This document shows, piece after piece, positions 15,859 through 39,734 of a stretch of 64,000 nucleotides of DNA. The stretch lies in IMG/VR virus record IMGVR_UViG_3300035698_010479, positions 1 to 64,000 of that record. One strand, 5' to 3'. Made by a program: the position numbers and the translations under genes. The notes beneath the pieces were generated by a model. That model searched no databases, was not told the origin of the DNA, and saw only the letters and a program-made list of their open reading frames with translations. Each line of letters starts with the position of its first letter. The stretch's first letter is position 1.

Positions 15859-17445
15859 ATGAAACAATTAAAAATAAAAATTATCCCGTTCGAAACAGAC
15901 AAGCATTTGAGTGAGATTTATCAGACATCTAAAATTACGTTTGCTTTTTTGTCAGCACCCAGAGATGGTAGTATGCAATGTCATCAATTTGTAAAGTGTA
16001 GGGATTTTTTACAAGATGCTATACGGGCACAGATAACCAAAAAACCAGGAAAAATTTATGGTTTTGAGTTTGATAGTACTAAAAATCCACCAATTGATAA
16101 CAGAAAAACTAGGATGATAGTACGTAGTACGATGCCCGAAAAAGATTTTAGTGTTGTTATGGAAAGAGCAGAAAAGTTACTACATCATTACGAGCATATG
16201 GCAGGTGTGGTTGCTTCTTCTGTGTACACGTATAATTCCGGTTATGTACTATGTAGTTCTAATTTTTGGATGTACTCACCAGTATTAATTTCACTTTACA
16301 CACTGATTATACGCCTAGCAGAATACGATATTAATTTTACAAAATTTGATAATGCAAGTTTATTAACTGCATTTGAATTATTGGCTGCTTCGGATAGTAC
16401 ATCAAATGAAGTAGAATACCTTAGAAAAATTCAAAAATACATACATAAAATTGTAACCAACTATCACTATGTATTTGAAAAAGATAAGAACAATAATTAT
16501 GACTCTCTATATTTTAAAGATATAACTATTTCATCATTTCACAATGACTCAGGTGTAGTAGGCCTATGTACAGCTATTATTAAATCCAAAATACAATTTG
16601 ATAGTTATACAAGACTTCAAGAAGCATTAACGAATGACATAGATAGAATTAATGACTTACCAGTAGTTGTATGTGGTAAGTATGGTGCTGTTGGTAGTTA
16701 CTATGCACCAAACAGTTGGCAATTCAGTGTTGCAAACTCAACAAACGAGCACATGTCTGCCGTAATTAACTTTTCCAAATGTAGAGAGCAACTAACAAAA
16801 CTGTTTGGTAAAATTGTGAAAGATACTACATTCGAAAAATTAAGTGTATTGGTTGGGATTGATGGTATTTTTGACGATGCACAGAGATTACTGAAACATA
16901 AAAAAGAAATGTTCTTTGCAAAAAGAGTATTGAACTTCATAGAAGCAAAGCATGGTATAAAGAAAACAACTATTACTACAATATGTTTAAAAGTTATAGG
17001 TACTAGGCGTAAACATTATGCCTGGTTATTGACTAGTAGTCTTGAATGGTCTAATAGTCCAGTAATGCTAAGTTTGTACGCTCTTATTATCCGAGCAGCT
17101 GCTAATTATTTCTCTTATTCAGGTATTGAATATAAAGAAATAAATGAAAAGAACTTTAAAACAATATGTAAATTTAGACGTACAGGCTCTTTACAAACCA
17201 GTAAAGATTGGGTATTACTAGATTCATTTAATAAACAAATAAATAACATAATTGAAAAAAGGAAAGAGCTGTTTGTTGATAACAATATTACAATACAAGA
17301 TAACTACTTTGTATCTAAAGAAAAAGCAGCAACCCTTGTATACGCTAATGCTACATTTAGTACTATTGGTGTGGCATCTTTACTAAATAAATGTCATATT
17401 GACACAAAACTACAAGAAAAATGTATGGAGTTAAAGGTATGTTAA
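15859..17445 (+). CDS. hypothetical protein with an internal tandem domain duplication
   Basis: KCRDFL...SPVLISLYTLIIR repeated as KCREQL...SPVMLSLYALIIR. Confidence 0.7.
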   Translation: MKQLKIKIIPFETDKHLSEIYQTSKITFAFLSAPRDGSMQCHQFVKCRDFLQDAIRAQITKKPGKIYGFEFDSTKNPPIDNRKTRMIVRSTMPEKDFSVVMERAEKLLHHYEHMAGVVASSVYTYNSGYVLCSSNFWMYSPVLISLYTLIIRLAEYDINFTKFDNASLLTAFELLAASDSTSNEVEYLRKIQKYIHKIVTNYHYVFEKDKNNNYDSLYFKDITISSFHNDSGVVGLCTAIIKSKIQFDSYTRLQEALTNDIDRINDLPVVVCGKYGAVGSYYAPNSWQFSVANSTNEHMSAVINFSKCREQLTKLFGKIVKDTTFEKLSVLVGIDGIFDDAQRLLKHKKEMFFAKRVLNFIEAKHGIKKTTITTICLKVIGTRRKHYAWLLTSSLEWSNSPVMLSLYALIIRAAANYFSYSGIEYKEINEKNFKTICKFRRTGSLQTSKDWVLLDSFNKQINNIIEKRKELFVDNNITIQDNYFVSKEKAATLVYANATFSTIGVASLLNKCHIDTKLQEKCMELKVC

Positions 17446-18344
17446 AACGTAATACTATTGGTACAGACCCTGAATTTTTTATTCGGTCTAGAGATGGTAA
17501 ATTTCTTAATGCCGAGGCAATGTTTCCTGGCACAAAAGATGAACCTTTTCCTATGAATAGTGGTGCAGGACTACAAACAGATAATGTAGCTGTAGAATTT
17601 GCCAGTCCAGTCGGTGAAAATGGGGCAGATTTGGTAGAAAAACTTAGGAATACTTTCAAAGAGTTATTTCTTATGATGCCAAAAGATACAGTGCTGGATC
17701 TATCACCTGCAGCAATATTCGATTTTGACCAGCTGCAAACTGAGCAAGCACAATTATTTGGGTGTTCTCCTAGTTATTGTGCTTGGGATTTAGTAGAAAA
17801 TGAACGCCCAAATGCTACAATAAGTAATCTTCGTAGTGCTGGAGCCCATATTCATATTGGCAAAGCAGACGGCGATGGTAATGACTTCTTACTCGATCCT
17901 TACGGTAAGATTAATACTGTCCGTATGTGTGATGCTCTTCATGGTATTATAAGTGTTGTATTAGACACATCGAAAGAGAGTGTAATGCGACGAGAGTTGT
18001 ATGGAAAAGCAGGCGAACATCGTCCAAAAGATTACGGTGTTGAATACAGAACACTATCACCATTTTGGATGAAAAGTCCTAATTTAGTAATGTTGATCGA
18101 CTCCTTAACATCAGATGCGTTGAAGTTGGTTAGGGAAGAACGGCACGAAGAACTTATTACAGATATTGGCGGAGGGGATGTTATTAGAAGTATTATAAAC
18201 ACCGGCAATGTCGAAAAAGCGAGGGAAGTTGTAGAAAATATTCTCTTTAACTATATGTCTAAAGATTCTATATATTTTTTCAAAGAATGTAGTGATGCTA
18301 TAGCCGCATATGATTTTAAAAAAGAGTGGCAATTAACAGTATAA
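17439..18344 (+). CDS. phiEco32-like COOH-NH2 ligase type 2
   Basis: IGTDPEFF, DNVAVEF, FGCSP, RSAGAHIHIG, RRELYGKAG, YGVEYRTLS. Confidence 0.88.
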   Translation: MLKRNTIGTDPEFFIRSRDGKFLNAEAMFPGTKDEPFPMNSGAGLQTDNVAVEFASPVGENGADLVEKLRNTFKELFLMMPKDTVLDLSPAAIFDFDQLQTEQAQLFGCSPSYCAWDLVENERPNATISNLRSAGAHIHIGKADGDGNDFLLDPYGKINTVRMCDALHGIISVVLDTSKESVMRRELYGKAGEHRPKDYGVEYRTLSPFWMKSPNLVMLIDSLTSDALKLVREERHEELITDIGGGDVIRSIINTGNVEKAREVVENILFNYMSKDSIYFFKECSDAIAAYDFKKEWQLTV

Positions 18345-18563
18345 ACTAGAAAAGGTACTCTAATTAAATTTAGGGTACCTTGTCATAGAGGAATTAAATA
18401 TATGACGAGGTTAGTTACAGATGCCCTGAGTGTGGTTGGGGGATATGAAGGCGAGACTGCTAATGTCCAAAATGTAGTTGTAAAGATCTTATAAATAAAA
18501 ATTAGTAAGCATTATACCGTAGTCAAAATAAATCATAAATACAAAACAACAAAGGGAAAAAAA

Positions 18564-19343
18564 ATGAAAATTGCATTACCAATCTTCGATGGCGATAACA
18601 GACTAACACTAAACACCGCCTATGTACAATATGTAGCCAACGCTGGTTTTGAGCCTATTCTTGTTACAGGCGCTAATAACTTGCAAGAAATTGCAAAGAT
18701 GTGTGATGGCCTGTTACTACCTGGAGGTATTGATGTAGAGCCTACATTCTACGGGGAGGATAATTTCGGTAGTGAAGGATGTGACCCAGAAAAAGATGAT
18801 TTTGAAAGAAAACTTCTTCACGCTTTTGCAGCAGAAGGTAAAAAGATTTTTGGTATTTGTAGAGGACATCAGTTAATAGTAAAAGAATTTCTTCACATGT
18901 TTCATAAACAATGCGCAGGTTTGTCCTTTTGGCAGCATATTAATAATCATTCATTAGCGCAAGCTAGAACAGCAAAAAGGTCTACACCTACTCACAGCGT
19001 TACTGTAAATCCTCTTCTGCTTTATGGTGTACAAGGCGAAAAGAAACTCAGTACTATATTTGTGAATTCAATGCATCATCAAGCTTTACTATCCGATGGC
19101 CCTAAAAATCTTACTAAAATTATTGATGCCCACAATTATATTAAATGTACTGGTGTAACTGACTTCGGTGCTCCTGCTGCAAAAGATAACGATTGGTTAG
19201 TTGTTGAAAGTGTAGATGTGATGCTTAACGGTGTACATATGCGCGGTGTACAATGGCATCCAGAAGAACTGATGGATATTGGCTTGTTAACTCATTATTT
19301 TGCAGGAGTCGCTAAAGCGGATGGAGTCAAATTATACAGGTAA
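18564..19343 (+). CDS. class I glutamine amidotransferase (peptidase C26 / gamma-glutamyl-GABA hydrolase-like)
   Basis: LLLPGGIDV, GICRGHQ, VNSMHHQ, GVQWHPE. Confidence 0.9.
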   Translation: MKIALPIFDGDNRLTLNTAYVQYVANAGFEPILVTGANNLQEIAKMCDGLLLPGGIDVEPTFYGEDNFGSEGCDPEKDDFERKLLHAFAAEGKKIFGICRGHQLIVKEFLHMFHKQCAGLSFWQHINNHSLAQARTAKRSTPTHSVTVNPLLLYGVQGEKKLSTIFVNSMHHQALLSDGPKNLTKIIDAHNYIKCTGVTDFGAPAAKDNDWLVVESVDVMLNGVHMRGVQWHPEELMDIGLLTHYFAGVAKADGVKLYR

Positions 19344-19565
19344 GATATTTTGGCAAGTGAATGTGTTACTAGGTAATGATTTAGAGCATTCTCGTAAAGT
19401 AACAAGGGTGGATTTAAAAAACTTTATAGCGCAAGCTCCGGCAGAATTACGCAATGTAAAGGATATGGATATAATAAATAAATATGTAATACCTTACGTA
19501 GAAAGTATTTATGCTGTATATCAAGCACCCATAAAATATATAATAGTGAGGAAAGCATCCGCAAT

Positions 19566-19946
19566 ATGACAATACTTAAAGTATTTGTGTACGGAACTTT
19601 GAAAGTAGGAGGCAGATTTTCTACTCGTTTCGATACAGTTAGAGTAAGTTCTAAGGAAGGTAAAATAAAGGGAAAGCTTTACGATTTAGGAAGTTTTCCA
19701 GCTGTAAAGCTAGAGGGTAATTCTGACGTTATAGGGGAAGTGCATACTTATTCAAATGCTGAAGAAGTTGAAAAAGCAATGGATAGGATTGAAGGCTATA
19801 ACGGTCCTGGAAAATCTTATAATCTCTACAATAAACGTACTGTACAAGTAAACACCTCAGATGGTGAAGAAACTTGTATAATGTATGAATTCGCACGTGA
19901 TATAGAAGCTAATAGGCAAATAAAAGAAGGAGTTTGGAAGATATGA
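19566..19946 (+). CDS. gamma-glutamylcyclotransferase (AIG2-like)
   Basis: VFVYGTLK, LYDLGSFPA, GEV, MDRIEG. Confidence 0.9.
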   Translation: MTILKVFVYGTLKVGGRFSTRFDTVRVSSKEGKIKGKLYDLGSFPAVKLEGNSDVIGEVHTYSNAEEVEKAMDRIEGYNGPGKSYNLYNKRTVQVNTSDGEETCIMYEFARDIEANRQIKEGVWKI

Positions 19947-20215
19947 AAATTGTTGGATTAACTACTGTATCCTTTGACGTAGCAGTTGGTAAACCTTTAA
20001 ATGAGGAACGTCCAGAGGAAGTAGTAAAAGAAATTAAATATTTTGAATCTTCTCAAGTATATAATAAGTTTATACATGAGCCTGTATATGTAGTAGAATC
20101 TACTAATACTACATTAAAGGTCTTAATACCAGTTAGGTCGGTAGACGGTATTGAGTTGGAAACAAAAAAAGATGAAGTAGTTAAACCTGATCTTTCAGTT
20201 ATTGGTGAATTATGA
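19934..20215 (+). CDS. hypothetical protein
   Basis: ORF coupled to both neighbours. Confidence 0.5.
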   Translation: MEDMKIVGLTTVSFDVAVGKPLNEERPEEVVKEIKYFESSQVYNKFIHEPVYVVESTNTTLKVLIPVRSVDGIELETKKDEVVKPDLSVIGEL

Positions 20216-20895
20216 AAATTTTGATTGTTGGTGGTTACGGCGGATATTCAAAGCCTTTTCAAGACTTGGGTGAAGTTTCGTATAAAGAAGAGGATTTTGT
20301 TAAAGAACCTAATTCCTTCGATTTGTTAGTGTTTACAGGTGGCGAAGATGTATGCCCAGCATTTTATGGACACACATCACCAAAACACATGTGTGGTTAC
20401 AATGTTAAAAGGGATATTGCTGAACAAGACTTATATAATATCGCCTCTGAAAATGGTATAAAAATGACTGGTATTTGCCGTGGTAGTCAATTTTTGAATG
20501 TAATGGCTGGTGGTGAAATGATGCATCATATTACAAATCACGGCACAAGTCACTCCGTTGAGACTGTAGATGGTTGTGAAATTTTTGTAACATCAACACA
20601 CCACCAAATGTGTATGCCAGCTAAGCATGGTTATGTAATGGCCTGGTCTAAAGAAAGAAGATCTTCTGCATATTACGGTGATAAAGATGAACTAGTTAAA
20701 TATTCAAATAAAGAAGTAGAGAGTATCTATTACCCGGAAGAGAATATATTCGCAGTACAATACCACCCAGAATACATGGATAGTAAGAGTGATGGTTTTT
20801 TATGGTATAGAGAGGCTGTGTACAATTTTTTGCATATGACAACAGAAGAGTTTGCTGCACGATATATAAATAAAGTAGCTACAGCTACTATGTAA
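20212..20895 (+). CDS. class I glutamine amidotransferase (peptidase C26-like), second copy
   Basis: FTGGEDV, GICRGSQ, STHHQ, VQYHPE. Confidence 0.9.
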   Translation: MKILIVGGYGGYSKPFQDLGEVSYKEEDFVKEPNSFDLLVFTGGEDVCPAFYGHTSPKHMCGYNVKRDIAEQDLYNIASENGIKMTGICRGSQFLNVMAGGEMMHHITNHGTSHSVETVDGCEIFVTSTHHQMCMPAKHGYVMAWSKERRSSAYYGDKDELVKYSNKEVESIYYPEENIFAVQYHPEYMDSKSDGFLWYREAVYNFLHMTTEEFAARYINKVATATM

Positions 20896-29940: not shown

Positions 29941-31044
29941 ATGCAGATAGAAAAGTCAGTAGTTATGTCAAATATTGCAGGTATTGAAGATAGTTTAATA
30001 AGAATGCCTGCAATATTAAGAAAAGAATTACAAGTAAATTTAGGTAATATTATTCTTGTTAGGGGACTACCCTTGCAAGTTAATAAAATGTTTAGTCAAG
30101 AAGTTATGTCTAGTGTATGTAAAGCATATGTTTCTGAAAATGTGTTAAAAAAATTAGGTATTCCAACACATAATCTATCAGTTGAGCAACATATAACTAT
30201 GGGATGTGACCCAGAATTATTTTTAGTTGACTCCAAAACAAATAAATTATATAACCCCGGATTTTTGGTTAAAAAAACAGCTCCTGTTGGGTATGATGGT
30301 ATGCTAGCAGAACTTAGACCTAACCCAGATGTAGATCCAGATAAAGTAATAAAGAATTTATACCAGTTAATAATTAATTTAAAAAATGTACTAGTAAAAA
30401 ATAATCTACATCATGTAAGAATGATAGCTAGGTCTAGTGGGTGGAACTTATTTGCGGGATTCCATGTACATCTTGGCATACCTAAGAAACTACTCGATCC
30501 TGGTATGCCTAATTATATAAAAATACTTAGAGTAATATTAAAATCATTGGATTACTACGTGGGTACTCTTGCAGTATTAGCAGAAGGAGTTGATTTTACA
30601 AGAAGATGTAATCCACTAGTAGCTTATGGTAAAGTTGGTGATTTTAGAGTTGATAATAGAACTTTAGAGTATAGAGTACCTGGTGGTGCATTACTTAAAC
30701 ACCCAGATATAGCAAGGGGTTTAATAAGCGTAGCATCATTAGTAGCACACGATGTAATTGAAAGATTGCGTATATTTACAAATGATTTTGTTGGTGAAAT
30801 AGCCGATGAGAGTATCTTGGCGAAGGAAATATATCCAAATTTAATAGACACACAGAGTATGTTTCAATTAATATGTGCACCAGATGTCAGTAAAGCTTGG
30901 GAGGAAATAAATAACATAAACCAAGATCTAAGTTGCATGGTTAATTATGATTATTACAGTGAGGCATTGGAAAAGTTTTATAACTTACTACATTTAAAAA
31001 TAGCTGATGATATTTGGCTGAATTGGAGTAAAATAGATGTATAA
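29941..31044 (+). CDS. phiEco32-like COOH-NH2 ligase type 2 with N-terminal extension
   Basis: MGCDPELF, DG..AELRP, AGFHVHLG, RR...YGK.GDFR, LEYRVPG. Confidence 0.85.
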   Translation: MQIEKSVVMSNIAGIEDSLIRMPAILRKELQVNLGNIILVRGLPLQVNKMFSQEVMSSVCKAYVSENVLKKLGIPTHNLSVEQHITMGCDPELFLVDSKTNKLYNPGFLVKKTAPVGYDGMLAELRPNPDVDPDKVIKNLYQLIINLKNVLVKNNLHHVRMIARSSGWNLFAGFHVHLGIPKKLLDPGMPNYIKILRVILKSLDYYVGTLAVLAEGVDFTRRCNPLVAYGKVGDFRVDNRTLEYRVPGGALLKHPDIARGLISVASLVAHDVIERLRIFTNDFVGEIADESILAKEIYPNLIDTQSMFQLICAPDVSKAWEEINNINQDLSCMVNYDYYSEALEKFYNLLHLKIADDIWLNWSKIDV

Positions 31045-32644
31045 CGATAAATGGATTTTCTTTAGTAATTTACCCGGAAAGCCTTCTCTAACAAACGAAG
31101 AAGTTAAATATTGGTTAGGGAGTTTAAATAAAGTATTAAAAGTAGGAGTTGAGTTTGAGTTTAACTTACAGGATGCTAAGGGCTTCTGTAGAGGTGCAAG
31201 TGAGAGTTGTCCGTGTATTAAAATGGATGACGCGCATGATTGCTGGAAAGTATGTCTTAACGAACATGAATGTAAAAACGAATTTGGTAAAGATTTTCAA
31301 GCCAATTGTCATAAACAGTTTTGTAGTGGTTTTAGAAGTGCCTGCATATCGTGTAAAGATTTCAAAGTAAATTGTTTGAATTGTAAATATATGTACGATC
31401 CAAGTTATGACCCTGACTCTATAAGAAATTTTTTACGGAGTTCTTTAGATCCATCTAAAAGTTATGGTAACTTAAGCCGGTCAGGTGTACATAGTGTAAT
31501 ATGTGACGGTTCTTTGTTAGGAGAAGGTCAGGAAGGTAAGGGTGTTGAAATTATCACGGTAGGCAGGCGTGTAGATTATTGGGAATTTTATAATATGATA
31601 AGTAATATTATTTCTATGTCTATAGAAAAAGGTGCTTACGTAAACGAAAGATGTTCCACACACATACATGTTCTTGGAGGTTATTTCGAGGCACGTGAAA
31701 ATAATTCAAAATATAGTGATGTAAATGACCTGGAAAAGCCGTTACCACAAATAGTGTTAGCCAATTTCCACCAGTTATGTAGAAGGTACCAAAACGCTAT
31801 TACTTGGATGTCAATGGGTTTAGATAAACCTGACCGTTTAACTAGATGGGAAAAGTACAGAGTATCGTTACTAAATACTTCACCAGTATCCATGTCAATG
31901 CAAGATATTATACGTAGATTAGAGGAAATTTCATATAAACCAAGAGGTAAATATGCTTGGACTAACTACATGTATTCAAAATTTGACAAAAATAACGATA
32001 TAACCAGGTTGCATGTAGAATTACGTGCATTAGATGGTATGATGTCTACAAGCGTTGTAACAGCAATGTGCTGCCTGTACCAAGCAATGATGATGAAAGC
32101 AGTAGAGATATCAAAATACGGTTTATTAGAGCTAGGTTCAAAAGAATGGTTTGAACAGACGCTTGATGTTAAGAACAACATGATGAATAACTGCCCTCAA
32201 GGTTGGTCAGAAAACAGATTTTCAGATACCTCTAATTTGAGAGAGGAACAAAAAGATATTTTACGTATGGAGTCTCTTGATCTTCTCAACCAATTGAAGC
32301 ATTTGTTAATGAGAACTGGCCCTTCTTTTGAAGTACTTGAGAAACTGGCACAAAAACCTGTAGCTTTCTTTAGATGTGATGGGGACTCTTGGGAAACCAT
32401 TGAAGAATATTTTGCTGTATTCAGAGCTAGTGAAACTATTCTAGATCAAAAACTTGACGAAATAATTGATTTTAGGACAGTGTCTGGGTGTGTGAATGAA
32501 TTAGCTTGGTTAGATCAAGTTAGTGGTATGTTAGTTAAAGAAGGTATAGCTACATCTGAGCAAGTACTAAATACAATAGCTATTCATAAACGAAATGGTC
32601 TGTGTATATGGTCTGATAACCTCGGTACCTTATTAAAAGTATAA
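31037..32644 (+). CDS. putative amidoligase (COOH-NH2 ligase type 1) with Cys-rich insertion
   Basis: VGVEFEF, DGSL, VEIIT, CSTHIHV, KY...N, VELR. Confidence 0.75.
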   Translation: MYNDKWIFFSNLPGKPSLTNEEVKYWLGSLNKVLKVGVEFEFNLQDAKGFCRGASESCPCIKMDDAHDCWKVCLNEHECKNEFGKDFQANCHKQFCSGFRSACISCKDFKVNCLNCKYMYDPSYDPDSIRNFLRSSLDPSKSYGNLSRSGVHSVICDGSLLGEGQEGKGVEIITVGRRVDYWEFYNMISNIISMSIEKGAYVNERCSTHIHVLGGYFEARENNSKYSDVNDLEKPLPQIVLANFHQLCRRYQNAITWMSMGLDKPDRLTRWEKYRVSLLNTSPVSMSMQDIIRRLEEISYKPRGKYAWTNYMYSKFDKNNDITRLHVELRALDGMMSTSVVTAMCCLYQAMMMKAVEISKYGLLELGSKEWFEQTLDVKNNMMNNCPQGWSENRFSDTSNLREEQKDILRMESLDLLNQLKHLLMRTGPSFEVLEKLAQKPVAFFRCDGDSWETIEEYFAVFRASETILDQKLDEIIDFRTVSGCVNELAWLDQVSGMLVKEGIATSEQVLNTIAIHKRNGLCIWSDNLGTLLKV

Positions 32645-32694: not shown

Positions 32695-33426
32695 ATGAGT
32701 GATATTTTTGGTTTTACTTTATTAAAAAATAATAGAATGAGTAAGGAAAGTATTATTACTCTTACAGCTCTTTTAATCAAGAGCCAGTTTGGTCCTATTG
32801 AAGAAATCAACTTGGCGGTAGCTACAGATAGTGCAATTCACATTATACGTACAGATATGTCGGTAAATAATTTCACAGTATCAAAAGAGTTCTTTAATTT
32901 CTTTGAAAATGTTACAAAAGATCAGAAAATCTTCTCATTGATAGGTAGTTTTAAAAATACTAAAAATGCTGAAGAATATAATACATCGGAAGAAAGGGCC
33001 TTAGCTGTTTATGGAGAAGCTGTGTGTGTTCAAAAGGAGTGCGAATTTACAGATGTACAATTTGGTGGTGATGTTGTTGCTGAAGTGTTGGATAGGTATG
33101 AATATGCAGCTGATATTACATCACGTATAAAAACTGCAGCTAAGGATGTACGGCTATACGCTGGAATACATGCAGCCTACCCATCTACCCTGTTATTAGC
33201 AAAACATACAGCAGACCCTTTACGTATTTGTATGTTTGCTACATACGGTGTGCTTATTTTTTCTTCTATTATAACAAGTATTGATAAAGTAACAACTCAG
33301 TTATTACTTGGAAAAAAAGAAGATGTTGATATATTCTCACACCAAGCTTTTCTGCTCTGTATGGATAGTAATAAATACAAGGTAGTTAACTCTTATCCTG
33401 GAAATGTAAATTATGCAATTAAATGA
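32695..33426 (+). CDS. possible degenerate class II (Ntn) glutamine amidotransferase-like protein
   Basis: MSDIFGF resembles MCGIFG without the Cys; LLLAK...PL...LIFSS resembles the Ntn-GAT C-terminal strands. Confidence 0.4.
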   Translation: MSDIFGFTLLKNNRMSKESIITLTALLIKSQFGPIEEINLAVATDSAIHIIRTDMSVNNFTVSKEFFNFFENVTKDQKIFSLIGSFKNTKNAEEYNTSEERALAVYGEAVCVQKECEFTDVQFGGDVVAEVLDRYEYAADITSRIKTAAKDVRLYAGIHAAYPSTLLLAKHTADPLRICMFATYGVLIFSSIITSIDKVTTQLLLGKKEDVDIFSHQAFLLCMDSNKYKVVNSYPGNVNYAIK

Positions 33427-34975
33427 AAAGTTTTTACTTGGTTATGGTAAAATAAATGGAATAGCTTGTAATGGTATAAATATATCAAAGCTACAGCCCA
33501 TTATATACACAGAATTACCTGGTGCTGGCACATGTTATACGATGACCCAGTTTGGTCTGCCTTATTTAAGGAGGCCTTGGGAGCTTGGTCAAGAAAGAAT
33601 GTCTAATATAGTACAAGGTGATATCGCTAGACATAAAGTTATATCAAACAAAGAAATTTCTTTTATGTTAGATTTTACTGACACAAAGAAATTAAACATG
33701 GACTTCTTGTTGTCTATGGCCGAGGGTAGCAAAAGATGTACTTTTATAATGACTGGTACACGTTTCCAAAACATAGTTAATAGTCTGTCAAAATTACATA
33801 ATACCTACAAAGTTTTTTCCAAAACTTATGAATATTATGAAGAAAATTCTAAAATGGATAATAACTATATATTTATGTTATCTATTTATGATTTGTCTAC
33901 AATAGTTGCTAATTTAAAGAATAAGCAACTGACAGGTTTTGGTTTAGCTGTAGAGGTGTTGAATAAATATAATACATCAAGATATAAAGTGCCAATGTTA
34001 AGTTATGCACAATATATGATTTATACAAATAACTATGATGACGTATACTACAGAGATTGTGTAGAGATTATACGTTTTTCAAGTATCAACTACGGTAGCC
34101 TTTCAGAAAATGTTAATAGCTTTAAAGCTCGTCAAATAGATGAAGAATTTATAGGTGATATATGTGTAAAAAAAGATATTGTTAAAAAAGGTGAACCACT
34201 TAAAAGTGCACGAAGACCAGTAGGACCTACTGTACCCAAAATAGTATTAAAATACGCTAATAACGACAATGATGGTGTGCCAAAACCAGTTTATGACAAT
34301 ATGCCACAAATGGATTATGATTTAGTATATGATGATTTAGAAAAATACGCTGCAGAGGTAAAAATTGCTATAAAACCTGCAGGCAATCCACTTACTGGAA
34401 AACCATTTGATAATCCATTTGAAGTAAAAGCAGCGCAGTTTGACGTTGTACCTATGGAACCTTTAATGGAACAAGAAAAACCATTACGTTTTAAGACAAA
34501 TAAACAAAAATTAGGCAAAAATGCTGTTGGAAAATCTTATGAAGAATTTGTAAAAGAAAAAAGAGACTATACAAATTCAAAGAAAATCCCAATGCCGATG
34601 CCAGTGTCTACACCGATTCCTATTGATGTATCTAATATAGACTTTGTAGATATAGAAACAAAAGTAGATGATTGGTGGGGTGAAGGACCAGTAACAGAAA
34701 AAGTAGAAAATGATTTGGAAATAGCTGCTTCGCTTGAGAGTGATGGTGGTGCACAAAAAAGTGTAAGTCTTAGAGAAATGGCAAAAAAATCCAAAATGGA
34801 CGTGTACTCCAAAATGTATGGTAAAACACAGCCTAAATATCAAGGAAGACCTACTGCAAAAAAAACGTTGGTAGATCTAGACTCAAGTGATTATGAAAAA
34901 TATGAGTCTATTGCTAGAGAGGACGTTATGCAAGAGCTAAGAAAAATACAAACAGTAACTAAAAAGAAGCGTTAG
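33413..34975 (+). CDS. hypothetical protein with low-complexity C-terminal half
   Basis: 520-aa ORF; Pro/Lys/Asp-rich tail. Confidence 0.65.
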   Translation: MQLNEKFLLGYGKINGIACNGINISKLQPIIYTELPGAGTCYTMTQFGLPYLRRPWELGQERMSNIVQGDIARHKVISNKEISFMLDFTDTKKLNMDFLLSMAEGSKRCTFIMTGTRFQNIVNSLSKLHNTYKVFSKTYEYYEENSKMDNNYIFMLSIYDLSTIVANLKNKQLTGFGLAVEVLNKYNTSRYKVPMLSYAQYMIYTNNYDDVYYRDCVEIIRFSSINYGSLSENVNSFKARQIDEEFIGDICVKKDIVKKGEPLKSARRPVGPTVPKIVLKYANNDNDGVPKPVYDNMPQMDYDLVYDDLEKYAAEVKIAIKPAGNPLTGKPFDNPFEVKAAQFDVVPMEPLMEQEKPLRFKTNKQKLGKNAVGKSYEEFVKEKRDYTNSKKIPMPMPVSTPIPIDVSNIDFVDIETKVDDWWGEGPVTEKVENDLEIAASLESDGGAQKSVSLREMAKKSKMDVYSKMYGKTQPKYQGRPTAKKTLVDLDSSDYEKYESIAREDVMQELRKIQTVTKKKR

Positions 34976-35154
34976 ATAGTTCTGTGTATAAAACTATGCG
35001 CGTTGGTGGGAAATTAGTACATCTTTCAACTATTCAACTATTTCTACTGACTCTTCTACATCCCTTAGCTATCACGATTCAATGAAATTTGCAAAATTTA
35101 TTAGTTAAATAAGTAAACATATGTTTGCTAACAACAACGAGAGGAATTCTAAAT

Positions 35155-36852
35155 ATGTGTGGTATTATAGGTGTTTTAGCTTTAGGTGAAGCAAAAGATG
35201 ATTTGAGGACTGGTGTTATGAAGTTCTTGTTCACTGAGCTACTCCAGTTAACTGAAGAACGTGGTAAAGATGCTACAGGCGTATCTGCATTATTCGAAGA
35301 TGGAATGTCTTATATCCAAAAAGGTCCAATCACAGCAACTGAATTTATTGGTAATTTGGGTGATGATGAAACGACATATAATAATTTTTTGAGTAATTGC
35401 ACAGACTATCGTAATGTTAACGAGACTGAATTAAAATTATTTATGGGGCATTGTAGAAAAAGTTCAGTTGGTGGTGCTTTTGATAATGTTAACAATCATC
35501 CAATTAAAGTAAATGAGATCGTTGGTGTACATAATGGTACGCTTGAAAATCACAATAAAATATTTAGTAACTTAGGTTGCAAACGTGATGGAGTTGTTGA
35601 TACTGAGGCCATCATGCGCTTGTTAAATCATTATACTGGTGATTGTACAGAACCCTTTACAATGGAAGGTATTGAAGAAGCAGCCAGAAGATTAGAAGGT
35701 GCTTATAGTGTATTAGCTTATAATGCCAATAATCCTTTCCAAGTATGTGTGATGAGAAAAGAAAGACCTTTTGAGATGGCTCTAATACGCGATTTAGGTA
35801 TTATGCTAATTTGCTCAGATAAATCTTTCTTTCTAAAAGCTCTTTACCAGTATAATAAATTTGCTTATTTGTTTAATAACGATTTTGAACCAATCGACAC
35901 AACTGAAGTTGAGGTGTTTACATTGCCGTTGGATCATGTTGGTTTTGTAGATCTTGCAATTGACATAACGGAAGACACAACTATTGCAGATCTACTCACG
36001 TCGAAAGATATTTTTAAAACACCTAAACTGTGGAAAACTCCAGCCAAAACATATGGTAATACTACATATTACGGAAGAGCTGGTAGTAATGCTGGTAAAA
36101 AAAACGACACAACAAGCGCAACAAAGCCAGCAGATACACCAAAAACAGAAGAAGTTAATAAAGAAAACTTCAAAGGTAAAGTATTTTGTAAACGCCTTAA
36201 TGCATATGTTAACCAAGAAAAAATAGATGAATCTAAAGCACAAGGACCTAAAGTAGTTAGCATTAACGGTGGGAAAGTGCAAGATTTAAAACAAGAAGAA
36301 CTATCTGATTTTGTAGAAGTTAAAGATATGAAATTAGATGTTAATAAAACACCGGTGCCTATCATTATGAAAGAAGTAAAAACAGTTGATGAAACTTTGG
36401 CAGAAGCTATGAAAGCAGCTACAGAACATGAAAATTTTAGTACAAGATTTAGTAACAGTAATGAAGTTGCTGATGCCCTTGAGATAAAATCTGTTGATAC
36501 TTTAGACAGTATCCCAGCATTTGCACTTGTAAACAAAGCCAAGGATGTTATATATAAAGAAGCTTTTGTAGATGGTGCTATGTGGTATAAACAAAAAGAA
36601 GTAAATAAACCGGATGAAAAATCATCTGATTCGACGGCTGCCGTTAGAATAGCCAAGCACGTAGTAGGTATATTTGGAACAGTAATCGACCAGTTAGCCG
36701 ATGGAAGAACAGAAGATTATGCTTCTAAAATTCTTGCTGAACTTAAAAAGCGAGACGTTACTGAACTGACTTTAGAAAACGTCAGACGAGTATTTTCAAA
36801 AGGTAATAAGCTATCTTGTAAAGCCCTAACTGCCTTGGAGGATGTAATATAA
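35155..36852 (+). CDS. class II (Ntn) glutamine amidotransferase with long C-terminal extension
   Basis: MCGIIG at ATG 35155 (GAGG upstream), RGKDATG, GHCR, NNHP, VHNGTLEN, VDTE, LEGAYS. Confidence 0.9.
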   Translation: MCGIIGVLALGEAKDDLRTGVMKFLFTELLQLTEERGKDATGVSALFEDGMSYIQKGPITATEFIGNLGDDETTYNNFLSNCTDYRNVNETELKLFMGHCRKSSVGGAFDNVNNHPIKVNEIVGVHNGTLENHNKIFSNLGCKRDGVVDTEAIMRLLNHYTGDCTEPFTMEGIEEAARRLEGAYSVLAYNANNPFQVCVMRKERPFEMALIRDLGIMLICSDKSFFLKALYQYNKFAYLFNNDFEPIDTTEVEVFTLPLDHVGFVDLAIDITEDTTIADLLTSKDIFKTPKLWKTPAKTYGNTTYYGRAGSNAGKKNDTTSATKPADTPKTEEVNKENFKGKVFCKRLNAYVNQEKIDESKAQGPKVVSINGGKVQDLKQEELSDFVEVKDMKLDVNKTPVPIIMKEVKTVDETLAEAMKAATEHENFSTRFSNSNEVADALEIKSVDTLDSIPAFALVNKAKDVIYKEAFVDGAMWYKQKEVNKPDEKSSDSTAAVRIAKHVVGIFGTVIDQLADGRTEDYASKILAELKKRDVTELTLENVRRVFSKGNKLSCKALTALEDVI

Positions 36853-36858
36853 GTTTAT

Positions 36859-38187
36859 ATGCTTAAACCACTAATCATTATACCGTCCGAATCTATGGAT
36901 GGTAATAAAAAACCAGACAGGGATGAAGATGTCTTGTTGAGGATGGCTAAAAGTACAAGGACAAGTGTAGCACTAGATGACAATAGTGTTACACTTACTG
37001 GTACACTTAGTAATAAAAAACTCAACGTATATAAAGCATTTTCTAAAGATTTAATAAAAATACGTGAGTTAGTTTTAAACGACGAGATACAATTTGAAGA
37101 TTCTTCAAGAGTGGCTTTTGTATCTTCTAGGACATATAAAGAATTGGGTGGATTAGGTGATTTCCTTGATCTAAGTAAAATTAAAGCCCCAAAAGTAGAA
37201 CAAAAGAAGGTAGTAAAAGAAGTTATAGATAAGTTACTAATAGGTACAGACCCAGAATTACTACTAATGTTGCAAGGTAAGGTGGTAAATGCTGCTGGAG
37301 TACCAGGATTTAGCAAACAATCAAAGTTTGGGTCTGATGGTGCAATGGCTGAAATGAGACCTGACCCAGCTTTTACTGCAGAAGGCCTTGTTAAAAATCT
37401 ACAAGATATATTACATGATGACGATTTACAAGAAAGAATAGCTTATTATGATTTAGTAAGCTCTTGTTATCATGAAGAAAAAGAAAGAGACTATCCTGTA
37501 GGAACACATATACATATTGATAACCCCACTAAGATTGCAAAATTACCAACAGAACAAAGATACCGTTTATTTGCTGTGACTAATAAAATAATGGATGAGT
37601 TATTAACAATACCTGCAATACGTTTAGATGGCCAAAAAGGTCATAATAGGCGTGCAAAATGTCGTATGAGTACCCATAATGGTTACGGTAACACATATGG
37701 TAAAGGTTATGGATTCTTCGGTGAATGGAGAGAATGTCATGGTAGGTTAGAACACAGAAGTTTATCTGGGTTAGTTTTGATGAACCCTGAAATAGCTACA
37801 GCGGTATTTGGTACGGCGCAGGCTATTGCCGAGGCTGCTTATAACGAAGCTATTCAAAATGGATTAAATAAAGAATTTATTTTACCTAAGGATTTCGATC
37901 ATAAGAGCATATACACAGCTACATTCAAACAATGGGGGGATATACCACTTGCAGAATCTTTAAATTGTACACTGACATCAAAAGAAATGGCTGCTTTGAT
38001 GGATTCTAGTGATAGATCAGTAGTATCCACAGGTTTCATTAAAAAATGGTTAACTAAAATTAGAAAATTAACTACTTATGGTAAGTTTTCTGAACATATC
38101 GAAGCACTTGGAGATATTTTATCTTCAACTGACAAAGTATTAGATAGCTTTGATACAAATATTAAAAATACATGGAAGGATAAATAA
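36859..38187 (+). CDS. phiEco32-like COOH-NH2 ligase type 2, third copy, with N-terminal extension
   Basis: IGTDPELL, GSDG..AEMRP, VGTHIHI, RR...YG..GEWR, LEHRSL. Confidence 0.82.
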   Translation: MLKPLIIIPSESMDGNKKPDRDEDVLLRMAKSTRTSVALDDNSVTLTGTLSNKKLNVYKAFSKDLIKIRELVLNDEIQFEDSSRVAFVSSRTYKELGGLGDFLDLSKIKAPKVEQKKVVKEVIDKLLIGTDPELLLMLQGKVVNAAGVPGFSKQSKFGSDGAMAEMRPDPAFTAEGLVKNLQDILHDDDLQERIAYYDLVSSCYHEEKERDYPVGTHIHIDNPTKIAKLPTEQRYRLFAVTNKIMDELLTIPAIRLDGQKGHNRRAKCRMSTHNGYGNTYGKGYGFFGEWRECHGRLEHRSLSGLVLMNPEIATAVFGTAQAIAEAAYNEAIQNGLNKEFILPKDFDHKSIYTATFKQWGDIPLAESLNCTLTSKEMAALMDSSDRSVVSTGFIKKWLTKIRKLTTYGKFSEHIEALGDILSSTDKVLDSFDTNIKNTWKDK

Positions 38188-38190
38188 CAA

Positions 38191-39282
38191 ATGCAAGATA
38201 CATATATATGGTACTCACCGGCAACTGACGTAACTGGTAAAAAACTTCAAGCGGAGTTGAATGCTTCTGGTGGTACAGCTAAGCCACCAGCTAATAAAAC
38301 TAATGTAATCTGCTGGGGTACAAAAACTGATGCTGATATCGTGATTAACAATAATAAAGTATATAATCACCCAAACAAAATTAGGACGAATAGAAACAAA
38401 GTAAATGCTCTGGCAGTATTAGCAAAAGGTGGTGTTAATGTTGCTACATTTACAGAAAATTTCAAATTGGCCGGTAATAAAGATTTTGCATTCCCCCTCG
38501 TAGCTCGTACTAAATTTCATCAAGGAGGCGCTGGATTTTGGTTGTGCTTAACAGCAGGTATGGTAGCACAAGCAGTAAAAGATGGTGCACAGTACATTCA
38601 AACATTCATTGATATCAAAGATGAATATCGACTTCATGTAGTCGATGGTAAAGTTATCTACGGAGTACGTAAAGTACAAAGAGATAATCATGCTGAGGCT
38701 TTTGTAGAACATTATAATGAACATATTCAAGATAAAGCCGTAAAAGGCAATGTAAATCTTGATAAGGTTACAGTTGACTTTGTACTTGGTAAACTTGCAC
38801 GTAAGCTTGCTACAGGCCCAGATATGGTGATTAGATCTAATACTCGCGGCTGGAAATTTAGTAAAGTAGCTAATGAAAATTTGGACAAAGGCCTTGTAGC
38901 AGAAGCAGTAAAAGCAGTAAAAGCTCTTGGTTTGGATTATGCGGCAGTTGATTGTTGCGTAGATAGTACAGGTAAGGCATTTGTTATTGAATGTAATACT
39001 GGACCAGGTCTCGACGGTACTTCGTTTGAGGCATGGTCTTCTGCACTCAAAACACTGGTAGCACCGCCTAAAGTTGTCAAAAAGGCAGCACCGGTTGAAC
39101 AAGCAGCACCTGCACCCGCATTTGCAAAAGCCAATGTTGGCATCGCTGCAGCTAAGCTTGGGGGTATTAATGCTAAACAACGTCTAAAAGAAAGAGCTGC
39201 TTTTTTAGCTCAGTTAGCAGAAGTAGCAGACGATGATGACGCCGAGTTGTTGGAAAAATTGTTGAAAAAAGCTAATATGTAA
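38191..39282 (+). CDS. ATP-grasp ligase (RimK/YheCD-like)
   Basis: NKVNAL, FPLVAR..HQGGAG, EYRLHV, IRSNTRGW, LGLDYAAVD, IECNTGPG. Confidence 0.88.
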   Translation: MQDTYIWYSPATDVTGKKLQAELNASGGTAKPPANKTNVICWGTKTDADIVINNNKVYNHPNKIRTNRNKVNALAVLAKGGVNVATFTENFKLAGNKDFAFPLVARTKFHQGGAGFWLCLTAGMVAQAVKDGAQYIQTFIDIKDEYRLHVVDGKVIYGVRKVQRDNHAEAFVEHYNEHIQDKAVKGNVNLDKVTVDFVLGKLARKLATGPDMVIRSNTRGWKFSKVANENLDKGLVAEAVKAVKALGLDYAAVDCCVDSTGKAFVIECNTGPGLDGTSFEAWSSALKTLVAPPKVVKKAAPVEQAAPAPAFAKANVGIAAAKLGGINAKQRLKERAAFLAQLAEVADDDDAELLEKLLKKANM

Positions 39283-39287
39283 TAAAG

Positions 39288-39734
39288 GTGCTTAGTATGG
39301 ATAAATTTAAATTTATTATAGACGAACAATATTTAGCTGAACAAATTGCTGGGCTTTTAAATAGCTATAACAAATTAAATACTGTTCATACTAAGCATAC
39401 AATATTAGCCAGTGAAGTTGTATACGTCATAAAACAAAAATATACGTCTGGTAAAGCACTTGTCGTAGGTTGCATAGGTATTCATATGAAAGATGAGCAA
39501 CTAACAACCTTACGGCATTTATGTGTCAACTATGAGTATAGACGTTTAGGAATAGGTTTAGAGTTGCTTAATGATACTTTGAAATATGTTACTACAAAAT
39601 ATGTACAAATGCATATAAGGCATGATAATTTGCCTAGTATAAACTTAGCTAGCAAAGCTGGATTTTTTGTTGACTCTTACGATATTAAAAAAGAATATTA
39701 TTTATTAACAGTTAAAAAGGAAGCACATGCTTAA
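39288..39734 (+). CDS. GNAT family acetyltransferase
   Basis: HLCVNYEYRRLGIGLEL; N.PS..L..KAGF. Confidence 0.85.
   Translation: MLSMDKFKFIIDEQYLAEQIAGLLNSYNKLNTVHTKHTILASEVVYVIKQKYTSGKALVVGCIGIHMKDEQLTTLRHLCVNYEYRRLGIGLELLNDTLKYVTTKYVQMHIRHDNLPSINLASKAGFFVDSYDIKKEYYLLTVKKEAHA

What the first reader, a model, noticed from the sequence alone, without database searches (positions are those of the whole stretch)
17439..39734. Greatly expanded amide/peptide-ligase cluster (about 11 enzymes)
Seen: three COOH-NH2 ligases type 2, one amidoligase, one ATP-grasp, two class I GATases, one class II GATase plus a possible dead copy, a gamma-glutamylcyclotransferase and a GNAT. Known: phiEco32-like phages carry a smaller version, predicted to make a gamma-glutamyl/peptide modification whose product I do not know to be identified. 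Inference: a multi-step write/erase pathway making a peptide metabolite or tagging proteins or the cell envelope.
Basis: partly seen in the sequence, partly recalled or inferred. Interest (0 to 1): 0.68.

Follow-up and report, generated by a model that had tools for sequence, protein, structure and literature searches.

The report
Expanded phage amide-ligase gene module
An uncultured salt-lake jumbo phage carries a doubled version of a known but still unexplained phage gene set for making and trimming amide (gamma-glutamyl-type) bonds; the set is real and standard in that phage's whole clade, but its product is still unknown.

Summary
Between 17.4 and 39.7 kb the window encodes three PF14395 COOH-NH2 ligases, one divergent amidoligase, one RimK-like ATP-grasp, one intact class II glutamine amidotransferase (GATase), one degenerate short class II GATase, two PuuD-like Peptidase_C26 enzymes, one GGACT and one GNAT. 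The amidoligase has no Pfam hit but has a glutamine-synthetase/YbdK/PafA fold. Ten enzymes keep their catalytic motifs and one is dead.

The genes form two blocks, 17439-20895 and 29941-39734. About 9 kb of other genes lies between them, including an RNA polymerase and an intein-bearing helicase.

Five members are orthologues of the five-gene cassette of phiEco32/LUZ24-like phages. The other six are additions.

The complement is not peculiar to this genome. All 11 related metagenomic loci I examined keep block A (29941-39734) in the same order. Four of five related virus records carry block B (17439-20895), and the fifth is truncated.

New details:
- Two of the ligases carry an N-terminal Cdc48-N-like double-psi barrel.
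- The amidoligase has an insert with 12 invariant cysteines and a possible winged-helix tail.

No known entry enzyme for DNA hypermodification is present. The product is unknown. The most likely function is a multi-step ATP-dependent amide-bond pathway with gamma-glutamyl-specific trimming. I rate it a new variant of a known kind, of moderate interest.

The parts
15859..17445 (+). 528-aa ORF of unknown function; possible accessory component. It is an internal tandem duplication of a ~265-aa unit, and its stop overlaps the start of ligase 1.
   Evidence: Relatives carry two separate ~265-284-aa paralogues at the same position directly upstream of ligase 1. No hit in Pfam, PHROGs, NCBIfam or the Atlas.
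17439..18344 (+). Ligase 1: minimal COOH-NH2 ligase type 2, the orthologue of the ligase in the cultured-phage cassette. The ORF opens at 17421; the likely start is Met7 at 17439.
   Evidence: PF14395 E 8.5e-9 and PHROG 3815 E 1e-52. blastp to the Kuravirus and Lahexavirus ligases gives E 1e-28. The four ligase motifs are present.
18564..19343 (+). Peptidase_C26 / class I GATase a, a PuuD-like gamma-glutamyl hydrolase.
   Evidence: PF07722 E 4.7e-29. It aligns to PuuD 6vtv with the nucleophile Cys and the His-Pro-Glu motif conserved.
19300..19569 (+). Small ORF (~82-89 aa) that follows C26a in the relatives too. Function unknown.
   Evidence: Positional conservation, with 33% identity in the closest relative.
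19566..19946 (+). GGACT/AIG2-like gamma-glutamylamine cyclotransferase.
   Evidence: PF06094 E 2.8e-16 over the full profile. Orthologue of the cultured-phage GGCT. The N-terminal YGTL-type motif and the acidic catalytic motif are readable.
19934..20215 (+). Small ORF (~89-102 aa) that precedes C26b in all relatives examined. Function unknown.
20212..20895 (+). Peptidase_C26 / class I GATase b.
   Evidence: PF07722 E 6.3e-20. Aligned to Lin1909 3fij with the Cys motif kept, and the His-Pro-Glu motif is present.
29941..31044 (+). Ligase 2: an N-terminal double-psi beta-barrel (residues 1-78) fused to a COOH-NH2 ligase domain (residues 84-367).
   Evidence: PF14395 E 3.9e-19. The AF2 model has pLDDT 90. 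YbdK Z 17.3, Dop and PafA Z 16.6. The N-domain matches Cdc48/VAT/PEX1/NSF N-domains at Z 8-9.8, rmsd 2.0-2.4.
31037..32644 (+). Divergent amidoligase: a GS/GCS2-fold core, an insert at residues 51-116 with 12 invariant Cys, and a C-terminal winged-helix-like domain (residues 465-535; a lead only).
   Evidence: Model pLDDT 78. YbdK Z 18.2, GCL Z 17.1, Dop Z 16.0, PafA Z 15.5 (Foldseek). Invariant motif columns are in A2. hhalign to cultured-phage Amidoligase_2 proteins gives probability 67%, E 5e-5. Pfam PF12224 itself gives no hit.
32695..33426 (+). Degenerate short class II (Ntn) GATase paralogue, a pseudoenzyme.
   Evidence: Relatives begin Met-Cys and keep the Arg, Asn-His-Pro, His-Asn-Gly and Asp-Ser-Glu motifs. 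The window, L007 and L008/9 have lost all of them.
33413..34975 (+). Protein X: a syntenic unknown with a weakly conserved N-terminal ~270 aa and a long low-complexity C-terminal extension.
   Evidence: Present between the two GATases in 10 of the 11 loci; L011 has no ORF of at least 60 aa there. It is 260-381 aa where the short GATase is live and 453-520 aa where it is dead. No family or Atlas hit.
35152..36852 (+). Long class II (Ntn) GATase with a ~280-aa C-terminal extension. The likely start is at 35152, so that Cys follows the initiator Met.
   Evidence: PF13522 E 1.4e-10. Aligned to GlmS with Arg73, Asn98-Gly99 and Asp123 matched. Relatives start directly at Met-Cys.
36859..38187 (+). 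Ligase 3: a paralogue of ligase 2, including the N-terminal barrel.
   Evidence: PF14395 E 2e-13. hhalign of the ligase 2 family against the ligase 3 family gives probability 100%, E 3.8e-40, end to end.
38191..39282 (+). RimK/R2K-like ATP-grasp ligase.
   Evidence: PF08443 E 6.8e-9 and PHROG 2599 E 1.9e-32. Invariant Lys/Arg, Gly-rich loop and Asp...Glu-x-Asn columns are shared with the cultured-phage orthologues.
39288..39734 (+). Small GNAT acyltransferase.
   Evidence: PF00583 E 8.8e-10. Its best NCBIfam resemblance is RimI, below the cut-off. It follows the ATP-grasp gene in all 11 loci.
39727..40449 (+). Protein Y: a syntenic unknown between the GNAT and a RuvB-like ATPase. Whether it belongs to the module is uncertain.

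Best explanation
This is a two-block, clade-conserved enlargement of the phage 'phiEco32/LUZ24' amide-ligase cassette.

Shown:
- Four glutamine-synthetase/GCS2-fold carboxylate-amine ligases and one ATP-grasp ligase, all with intact motifs.
- One intact N-terminal-Cys glutamine amidotransferase, plus one decayed copy.
- Two PuuD-like gamma-glutamyl hydrolases, one gamma-glutamylamine cyclotransferase and one GNAT.

Inferred from the chemistry of these families:
- Each ligase activates a carboxylate with ATP as an acyl-phosphate and joins it to an amine, so up to five different amide bonds can be made.
- The class II GATase hydrolyses glutamine to feed ammonia to a partner ligase, turning a carboxylate into a carboxamide. 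The partner is most likely the amidoligase, its neighbour in every cultured cassette.
- The ATP-grasp adds an amino acid (Glu-type) to a carboxyl end, and the GNAT caps an amine.
- The C26 hydrolases and GGACT cleave gamma-glutamyl-amine links, releasing Glu or 5-oxoproline. At least one ligase therefore makes such a link, which is later edited, recycled or removed as a temporary protecting group.

Target (inference, with my odds):
- Peptide or protein amine/carboxyl groups, about 0.35. This is favoured by the Cdc48-N-like barrels on two ligases and by the RimK- and RimI-like pair.
- A small amine or peptide metabolite, about 0.3.
- The envelope, about 0.1.
- Nucleic acid, about 0.1.
- Something else, the remainder.

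The confidence given below is for the pathway-level statement, not for a particular target.
For: - Family assignments and motifs.
- Folds of the amidoligase and of ligase 2.
- One-to-one orthology of five members with the Kuravirus/Lahexavirus cassette, with the same order ligase-amidoligase-GATase-ATP-grasp.
- Conservation of block A (29941-39734) in 11 of 11 related loci.
- Block B (17439-20895) with three ligase ORFs, two C26 and one GGACT in four of five related virus records, the fifth being cut at the contig end.
- More than 390 homologues of the amidoligase at E <= 0.001; the 120 best listed share 41-84% identity.
- All genomic copies of PF14395, PF13522 and PF07722 lie in this span.
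- ATP-grasp, GATase and the GGCT-like protein are listed among 'early gene products' in the proteomics of the cultured relative SU10: PMC4281155.
Against: - No product or substrate is known for any version of the cassette.
- The two blocks are 9 kb apart with unrelated genes between them. Their co-occurrence within one clade may be inheritance rather than functional coupling.
- A class II GATase domain could act as an Ntn peptidase rather than as an ammonia donor.
- The C26 enzymes could be true amidotransferase subunits rather than hydrolases.
- The winged-helix-like tail and Cys-rich insert of the amidoligase, and the surrounding polymerase, helicase and RuvB-like genes, would also fit a nucleic-acid target.
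- The predicted pair amidoligase + short GATase gave no answer.
Confidence: 0.55

Rival explanations
1. Small-molecule route. The module gamma-glutamylates, amidates and acetylates free amines such as polyamines or amino acids, then releases them again, as in the Puu pathway or in butirosin's gamma-glutamyl protecting-group logic. This would reshape host amine, glutamate or polyamine pools, or make a diffusible peptide metabolite.
For: - C26a is most similar to PuuD (NCBIfam NF008471 E 2.6e-13; PDB 6vtv).
- GGACT acts on gamma-glutamyl amines (family knowledge).
- GS-fold ligases include gamma-glutamyl-amine synthetases such as GmaS among the structural neighbours.
- A GNAT could be a SpeG-type amine acetylase.
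- No tag-like small protein with a conserved C-terminus was seen.
Against: - All equivalog scores are far below their cut-offs.
- No oxidase or dehydrogenase step of the Puu route was seen in the span.
- The Cdc48-N-like barrels on two ligases are more typical of macromolecule recognition.
Confidence: 0.3
2. Cell-envelope modification. The enzymes alter peptidoglycan stem peptides or another surface polymer, for example by amidation or added amino acids, to block superinfection or control lysis. This is the proposal attributed to Iyer et al. 2009 for phiEco32.
For: - The proposal as quoted in PMC10580990.
- Glutamine-dependent amidation of a Glu carboxylate by a ligase plus a GATase has a precedent in MurT/GatD (my knowledge).
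Against: - No Mur-ligase, transpeptidase, flippase, signal peptide or membrane-associated gene was noticed in either block.
- The genes sit among polymerase and helicase genes.
- The Iyer 2009 paper itself could not be read here.
Confidence: 0.1
3. Nucleic-acid hypermodification. The ligases and GATases extend or amidate a side chain on a DNA (or RNA) base, in line with the amidoligase and amidotransferase genes that Lee et al. saw beside thymidine-hypermodification genes.
For: - PMC8989533 notes the co-association.
- The amidoligase has a 12-Cys insert and a winged-helix-like C-terminus.
- Neighbouring genes are an RNA polymerase, a helicase and a RuvB-like ATPase.
Against: - The 228-kb record has no 5-HMUDK (PF18723), no Tet_JBP and no TGT/DpdA.
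- Its only thymidylate-synthase-family gene scores as true ThyA (TIGR03284, 297 bits) and sits next to DHFR.
- The winged-helix match is under the tool's trust line (Z 7.7).
- The record is only 86% complete, so absence is not proof.
Confidence: 0.1
4. Not one system. Block B (ligase 1, two C26, GGACT) and block A are separate functions that merely lie near each other. Counting '11 enzymes in one pathway' would then overstate the case.
For: - About 9 kb of unrelated genes separates the blocks.
- In one relative the GGACT lies about 9 kb from ligase 1.
- C26 genes are almost absent from cultured cassette carriers.
Against: - In cultured phages the orthologues of ligase 1 and GGACT sit in the same cassette as the orthologues of the amidoligase, GATase and ATP-grasp. 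This ties members of both blocks together independently of this clade.
Confidence: 0.15

Closest known systems
phiEco32 / LUZ24-type phage cassette (COOH-NH2 ligase type 2, Amidoligase_2, class II GATase, ATP-grasp, GGCT/AIG2)
   Same: All five components have orthologues here. The order ligase-amidoligase-GATase-ATP-grasp is the same, and the cassette likewise sits among early or replication-type genes.
   Different: Here the canonical ligase and GGACT lie in a separate block. Six genes are added: two barrel-fused ligases, a second short GATase, two C26 hydrolases and a GNAT. The amidoligase has diverged beyond Pfam recognition and carries a 12-Cys insert. The product is unknown in both versions.
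Pupylation enzymes PafA and Dop
   Same: Ligase 2 and the amidoligase match PafA and Dop as strongly as they match YbdK (Z 15.5-16.6). The gamma-glutamyl-amine chemistry with a removal step is analogous.
   Different: No Pup-like small protein with a conserved C-terminal Gly-Gly-Gln/Glu was found. No proteasome or Mpa context is evident. The similarity is at superfamily level only.
Puu pathway (PuuA gamma-glutamyl-putrescine synthetase with PuuD hydrolase)
   Same: It pairs a GS-superfamily ligase with a C26 gamma-glutamyl hydrolase. C26a is nearest to PuuD.
   Different: The ligases here are GCS2/YbdK-like rather than type I GS. No oxidase or dehydrogenase was seen. Scores are far below equivalog cut-offs.
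Butirosin BtrJ/BtrG gamma-glutamyl protecting-group pair (recalled from my own knowledge, not tested)
   Same: An ATP-grasp ligase adds a gamma-glutamyl group that a GGCT-family enzyme later removes. That is the same logic as ATP-grasp plus GGACT here.
   Different: No acyl carrier protein or aminoglycoside genes are present. The resemblance is one of logic only.
RimK (ribosomal protein S6 glutamate ligase) and RimI (S18 acetyltransferase)
   Same: The adjacent ATP-grasp and GNAT genes have these two as their best named resemblances.
   Different: Both matches are well below the curated cut-offs, and generic small GNATs often hit RimI. No evidence points to a ribosomal target.

Membership tests
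Phage phiEco32-like amide-ligase cassette | At least one PF14395 COOH-NH2 ligase type 2 | tested here: met
   Three hits over the cut-off. Ligase 1 matches PHROG 3815 at E 1e-52.
Phage phiEco32-like amide-ligase cassette | Amidoligase_2 (PF12224) gene next to the ligase | tested here: inconclusive
   PF12224 gives no hit. However, the gene in that position has the GS/GCS2 fold. It shares the Arg-Cys-Ser-Thr-His-x-His region with cultured-phage amidoligases (hhalign probability 67%, E 5e-5; blastp E 3.4e-4).
Phage phiEco32-like amide-ligase cassette | Class II GATase, ATP-grasp and GGCT/AIG2 genes accompanying the ligases | tested here: met
Phage phiEco32-like amide-ligase cassette | One contiguous cassette | tested here: not met
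   The genes are split into two blocks 9 kb apart, here and in the relatives.
GS/GCS2 carboxylate-amine ligase superfamily (four ligases) | Fold, plus the acidic first-strand motif, second Glu, His-x-His and Glu-x-Arg | tested here: met
   Fold Z 17-18 to YbdK for ligase 2 and the amidoligase. The motif columns are invariant in A2, A5 and A8, and they are readable in ligase 1. Ligases 1 and 3 were not folded.
Class II (Ntn) glutamine amidotransferase: long copy 35152-36852 | N-terminal Cys after Met, Arg, Asn-Gly oxyanion pair, and Asp binding the glutamine amino group | tested here: met
   The alignment to GlmS matches Arg73, Asn98-Gly99 and Asp123. The Met-Cys start is shared with the relatives.
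Class II (Ntn) glutamine amidotransferase: short copy 32695-33426 | The same catalytic residues | tested here: not met
   Cys is replaced by Ser, and the Asn-His-Pro, His-Asn-Gly and Asp-Ser-Glu motifs are absent. All are present in six related lineages.
Class I GATase / Peptidase_C26 | Cys-His-Glu triad | tested here: met
   The Cys motif and the His-Pro-Glu motif are present in both copies. They were aligned to PuuD and to Lin1909.
ATP-grasp (RimK-like) | ATP-binding Lys/Arg, Gly-rich loop, Mg-binding Asp and Glu-x-Asn | tested here: met
   These columns are invariant across the clade and two cultured-phage orthologues. Pfam RimK is over its cut-off.
GGACT/AIG2 | Full-length domain with the N-terminal Tyr-Gly-Thr-Leu-type motif and the catalytic Glu | tested here: met
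   PF06094 covers profile positions 1-119 of 120, E 2.8e-16. The motifs were read. No PDB sequence hit was available to align the Glu formally.
Pupylation-like protein tagging | A small tag protein with a conserved C-terminal Gly-Gly-Gln/Glu | tested here: not met
   The small syntenic ORFs of block B have variable C-termini. Only ORFs inside the blocks were inspected.
Thymidine hypermodification pathway (Lee et al.) | 5-HMUDK, a dUMP hydroxymethylase or Tet/JBP, and aGPT-Pplase | tested here: not met
   No PF18723 and no PF12851. The only PF00303 gene is a true ThyA next to DHFR. aGPT-Pplase was not searched. The record is 86% complete.
7-deazaguanine DNA modification | DpdA/TGT transglycosylase | tested here: not met
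   No PF01702 match in the record.

The most novel reading that the evidence does not exclude
The module is a phage-encoded, reversible protein- or peptide-tagging system. The two barrel-fused ligases would use their Cdc48-N-like domains to hold a host or phage protein and attach glutamate or short peptide tags through isopeptide bonds. The tags would be amidated with glutamine-derived ammonia, then removed by the two PuuD-like hydrolases and GGACT. This would be a viral functional analogue of pupylation/depupylation, built from different parts.
Probability: 0.2. Interest if true: 0.85.

Novelty: new variant of a known kind. Interest (0 to 1): 0.5.

Why it matters
The five-gene cassette is found in hundreds of cultured phages: 313 records match ligase 1, including Pseudomonas and E. 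coli phages. It has had no known product since it was described in 2009.

This clade shows the same core in a richer setting:
- Extra ligases carry a macromolecule-binding type of domain.
- Dedicated gamma-glutamyl-amide hydrolases are added.
- One paralogue has decayed into a pseudoenzyme in some lineages.

These additions narrow the chemistry to gamma-glutamyl-amine and amidation steps. They also give concrete handles for finding the target, such as barrel-domain pull-downs and hydrolase substrate panels. If the target proves to be protein, this would be a new type of viral post-translational takeover. If it is a metabolite or DNA, it would be a new phage biosynthetic pathway.

Tried and rejected
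- Megablast and tblastn of block A, ligase 3 and the RNA polymerase against 50,697 phage records gave no match. A single-protein scan of IMG/VR with ligase 3 also found nothing.
- PF12224 gave no hit in the genome.
- phmmer or a profile against PDB sequences found nothing for the amidoligase, protein X, the ATP-grasp or GGACT.
- hhalign of the amidoligase family against the ligase 2 family showed no detectable link at profile level.
- The Atlas look-alike search for protein X and for the 528-aa upstream ORF gave nothing usable.
- Pfam at a relaxed E-value on the N-domains, the GATase tail, X, Y and the small ORFs gave only sub-threshold noise. The one item worth noting was CDC48_N at E 0.008 for the ligase 2 N-domain.
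- PHROGs and hhalign gave no link between the 265-aa paralogue family upstream of ligase 1 and the two hypothetical genes that precede the ligase in Kuravirus and Lahexavirus.
- The promoter/terminator scan showed no enrichment over shuffles.
- Complex prediction on amidoligase + short GATase returned no verdict, which is not evidence either way (after four busy refusals).
- The search for sequencing runs found only salt-lake DNA runs and no RNA.
- No sigma-like gene was found downstream of the RuvB-like gene in the window.
- The six-frame RimK search missed even the known ATP-grasp gene, so it says nothing about further copies.
- Iyer et al. 2009 is not held in the library.
- The large representative-protein search was not used. 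One word search was also left unused.

Full report
**Setting.** The window is the first 64 kb of a single 228,458-bp IMG/VR virus record, estimated 86% complete. It has about 34% G+C, and almost every gene in the window is on the + strand. Near-identical DNA occurs only in salt-lake metagenome runs; no RNA run holds it. Nothing in 50,697 deposited phage records resembles block A, ligase 3 or the RNA polymerase at DNA or protein level. The genome is therefore a distant, uncultured jumbo phage.

| Enzyme | Coordinates |
|---|---|
| COOH-NH2_lig (PF14395), ligase 1 | 17421/17439-18344 |
| COOH-NH2_lig, ligase 2 | 29941-31044 |
| COOH-NH2_lig, ligase 3 | 36859-38187 |
| Peptidase_C26 / class I GATase a | 18564-19343 |
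| Peptidase_C26 / class I GATase b | 20212-20895 |
| GGACT | 19566-19946 |
| Class II GATase (long) | 35125-36852 |
| RimK/R2K-like ATP-grasp | 38191-39282 |
| GNAT | 39288-39734 |

Two further members have no family hit. The 535-aa ORF 31037-32644 was modelled from an alignment of 20 homologues (pLDDT 78). Its core matches YbdK (Z 18.2, 277 residues), plant glutamate-cysteine ligase (Z 17.1), Dop (Z 16.0), PafA (Z 15.5) and many glutamine synthetases (Foldseek). Its family keeps invariant an acidic first-strand motif, a second Glu, an Asn-Glu-Arg-Cys-Ser-x-His-x-His stretch and a His-x-Glu-x-Arg motif.

The 243-aa ORF 32695-33426 is the 'possible dead copy'. Its counterparts in six related lineages start Met-Cys and keep the Arg, Asn-His-Pro, His-Asn-Gly and Asp-Ser-Glu motifs of class II amidotransferases. 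The window, its closest relative L007, and L008/L009 have lost all of these. On a tree of the amidoligase, the window and L007 form a clade (100/100). L008 is unresolved among the lineages with a live copy, so there were one or two inactivation events.

**Catalytic state of the others.**
- The long GATase aligns to GlmS with Arg73, Asn98-Gly99 and Asp123 matched. Its real start is probably 35152, so that Cys follows the initiator Met, as in the relatives.
- C26a aligns to PuuD, and C26b to Lin1909, with the nucleophile Cys and the His-Pro-Glu motif kept.
- The three PF14395 ligases show the four ligase motifs.
- The ATP-grasp keeps the Lys/Arg, Gly-rich loop and Asp...Glu-x-Asn columns, invariant even against two cultured-phage orthologues.
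- Ten enzymes therefore look active and one is a pseudoenzyme.

**Anatomy.** The 22-kb span is really two blocks. Block B (17439-20895) reads: ligase 1, C26a, a small ORF, GGACT, a small ORF, C26b. Block A (29941-39734) reads: ligase 2, amidoligase, dead short GATase, unknown X, long GATase, ligase 3, ATP-grasp, GNAT.

Between the blocks lie four unknown ORFs, a 1085-aa protein with weak hits to both the Rpb2 and Rpb1 barrel domains, and an 812-aa helicase carrying a LAGLIDADG intein. All copies of PF14395, PF13522 and PF07722 in the whole record lie inside the span.

**New structural details.** The ligase 2 model (pLDDT 90) has a ligase domain at residues 84-367. It matches YbdK at Z 17.3 and Dop and PafA at Z 16.6. 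Residues 1-78 form an N-terminal double-psi beta-barrel that matches the N-domains of Cdc48, VAT, PEX1 and NSF (Z 8-9.8, rmsd 2.0-2.4 over 66-72 residues). The ligase 2 and ligase 3 families are homologous end to end, barrel included (hhalign probability 100%, E 3.8e-40).

The amidoligase has an insert at residues 51-116 with 12 invariant cysteines. This region is poorly modelled and is probably metal-binding (inference). Its C-terminal 70 residues have a helix-helix-helix-strand-strand layout that matches winged-helix domains at Z about 7. That is below the tool's trust line, so it is only a lead.

**Relation to the known cassette.** LUZ24-like phages carry, in order, a PF14395 ligase, a small unknown, Amidoligase_2, a class II GATase, an ATP-grasp and an AIG2/GGCT protein, next to the primase/helicase (PMC3890496). 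Kuravirus and Lahexavirus records show the same arrangement.

By blastp, each of these five has one counterpart in the window:

| Cultured-phage gene | Window counterpart | E-value |
|---|---|---|
| Ligase | Ligase 1 | 1e-28 |
| Amidoligase | 535-aa ORF | 3.4e-4 |
| GATase | Long GATase | 4e-11 |
| ATP-grasp | ATP-grasp | 3e-16 |
| GGCT | GGACT | 2e-4 |

A profile comparison links the 535-aa family to the cultured amidoligases over the Arg-Cys-Ser-Thr-His-x-His region (probability 67%, E 5e-5).

Ligase 1 has homologues in 313 phage records, nearly always one per record. Ligase 3 has none. C26 homologues are almost absent from phage records. The window therefore holds the canonical five plus six additions: two barrel-fused ligases, a short GATase, two C26 enzymes and a GNAT.

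**Is it special to this genome?** No. The amidoligase has more than 390 homologues at E <= 0.001; the 120 best listed share 41-84% identity and lie on contigs of up to 325 kb. All 11 fetched loci keep block A in the same order, flanked by the same polymerase, helicase and RuvB-like genes. Four of five related virus records, including one rated 100% complete at 268,764 bp, hold three ligase ORFs, two C26 and one GGACT. The fifth is cut at the contig end.

**What it does.** The literature held here gives only predictions. It cites cell-wall modification or superinfection exclusion (quoted in PMC10580990) and secondary metabolism. It also notes that amidoligase and amidotransferase genes lie beside thymidine-hypermodification genes in viromes (PMC8989533). 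SU10 proteomics lists the ATP-grasp, the GATase and the GGCT-like protein as early gene products (PMC4281155).

From established family chemistry I infer a multi-step ATP-dependent amide-bond pathway:
- Up to five acyl-phosphate-forming ligases each make an amide bond.
- Glutamine-derived ammonia is used for amidation.
- An amine is capped by acylation.
- Gamma-glutamyl-amine links are removed by two PuuD-like hydrolases and a cyclotransferase. Precedents for this logic are the Puu pathway and the butirosin protecting group (the latter from my own knowledge).

The barrel domains and the RimK/RimI-like pair lean towards a peptide or protein acceptor. The PuuD-like enzymes lean towards small amines.

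The DNA rival is weakened. The record has no 5-HMUDK, no Tet/JBP and no TGT/DpdA, and it has a canonical ThyA-DHFR pair. It is not excluded, because the record is incomplete and the amidoligase may carry nucleic-acid-type domains. A predicted complex of the amidoligase with the short GATase gave no verdict.

**Verdict.** This is a new variant of a known, functionally unsolved phage cassette, and it is standard within a large uncultured jumbo-phage clade. Interest is moderate.

Noticed in passing
window 15859-17445 and 13005-13886; L019, L020, L021: A family of ~265-aa proteins with invariant Cys, Glu, Pro, Arg and Gly lies directly upstream of ligase 1 in all relatives examined. In the window and its closest relative, two copies are fused into one 526-528-aa ORF whose stop overlaps the ligase start. 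No database match of any kind.
   Followed up: partly
window 23334-26591: A 1085-aa protein has weak hits to both RNA polymerase barrel domains (Rpb2 domain 6 at residues 301-464, Rpb1 domain 2 at residues 723-829). It looks like a single-chain beta/beta'-type polymerase. It is conserved (41-71% identity) upstream of block A in all 10 loci that reach that far upstream.
   Followed up: partly
window 27438-29876: The ResIII/DEAD helicase is 812 aa and contains a LAGLIDADG domain at residues 431-499. Most relatives have 461-470 aa and one (L012) has 833 aa. This suggests an intein or homing-endonuclease insertion.
   Followed up: partly
window 33413-34975 versus L004-L014: Protein X is long (453-520 aa) exactly in the genomes whose short GATase is dead (window, L007, L008/9). 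It is 260-381 aa where that GATase is intact.
   Followed up: partly
window 58644-59540, 60078-61409, 62163-62912: An NMN adenylyltransferase-Nudix fusion, a nicotinamide phosphoribosyltransferase and an NAD kinase lie together. This is an NAD salvage set of the kind linked to countering NAD-depleting defences (from my own knowledge). Lahexavirus LAh_9 also has NAMPT next to its ligase cassette.
   Followed up: no
window 47688-48350 and 49358-50014: Two ~220-aa proteins end in a PEP-CTERM sorting motif. This hints at a Gram-negative host with an exosortase.
   Followed up: no
window 1567-2607, 4625-6325, 6329-7069, 9510-10634, 10741-12069, 54316-55761: Potassium channel with an RCK domain, an NMT1_3 binding-protein-like domain, DUF2491, an ATP-dependent DNA ligase, a CCA-adding enzyme with an HD domain, and a TROVE/Ro60-vWA protein.
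   Followed up: no
G000:C1 118270-122472 (L017 2271-6473), outside the window: Two GT4-type glycosyltransferase paralogues flank a ThyA-DHFR-MutT-like group. A Cas4/AddA-like nuclease and a DnaJ homologue follow.
   Followed up: no
window 40449-41432; L004, L005: A RuvB-like AAA+ protein follows the module in all 11 loci. The three loci with gene calls (L004, L005, L006) have a sigma-70 region 2-like gene next; no such gene was found by tblastn downstream of it in the window.
   Followed up: partly
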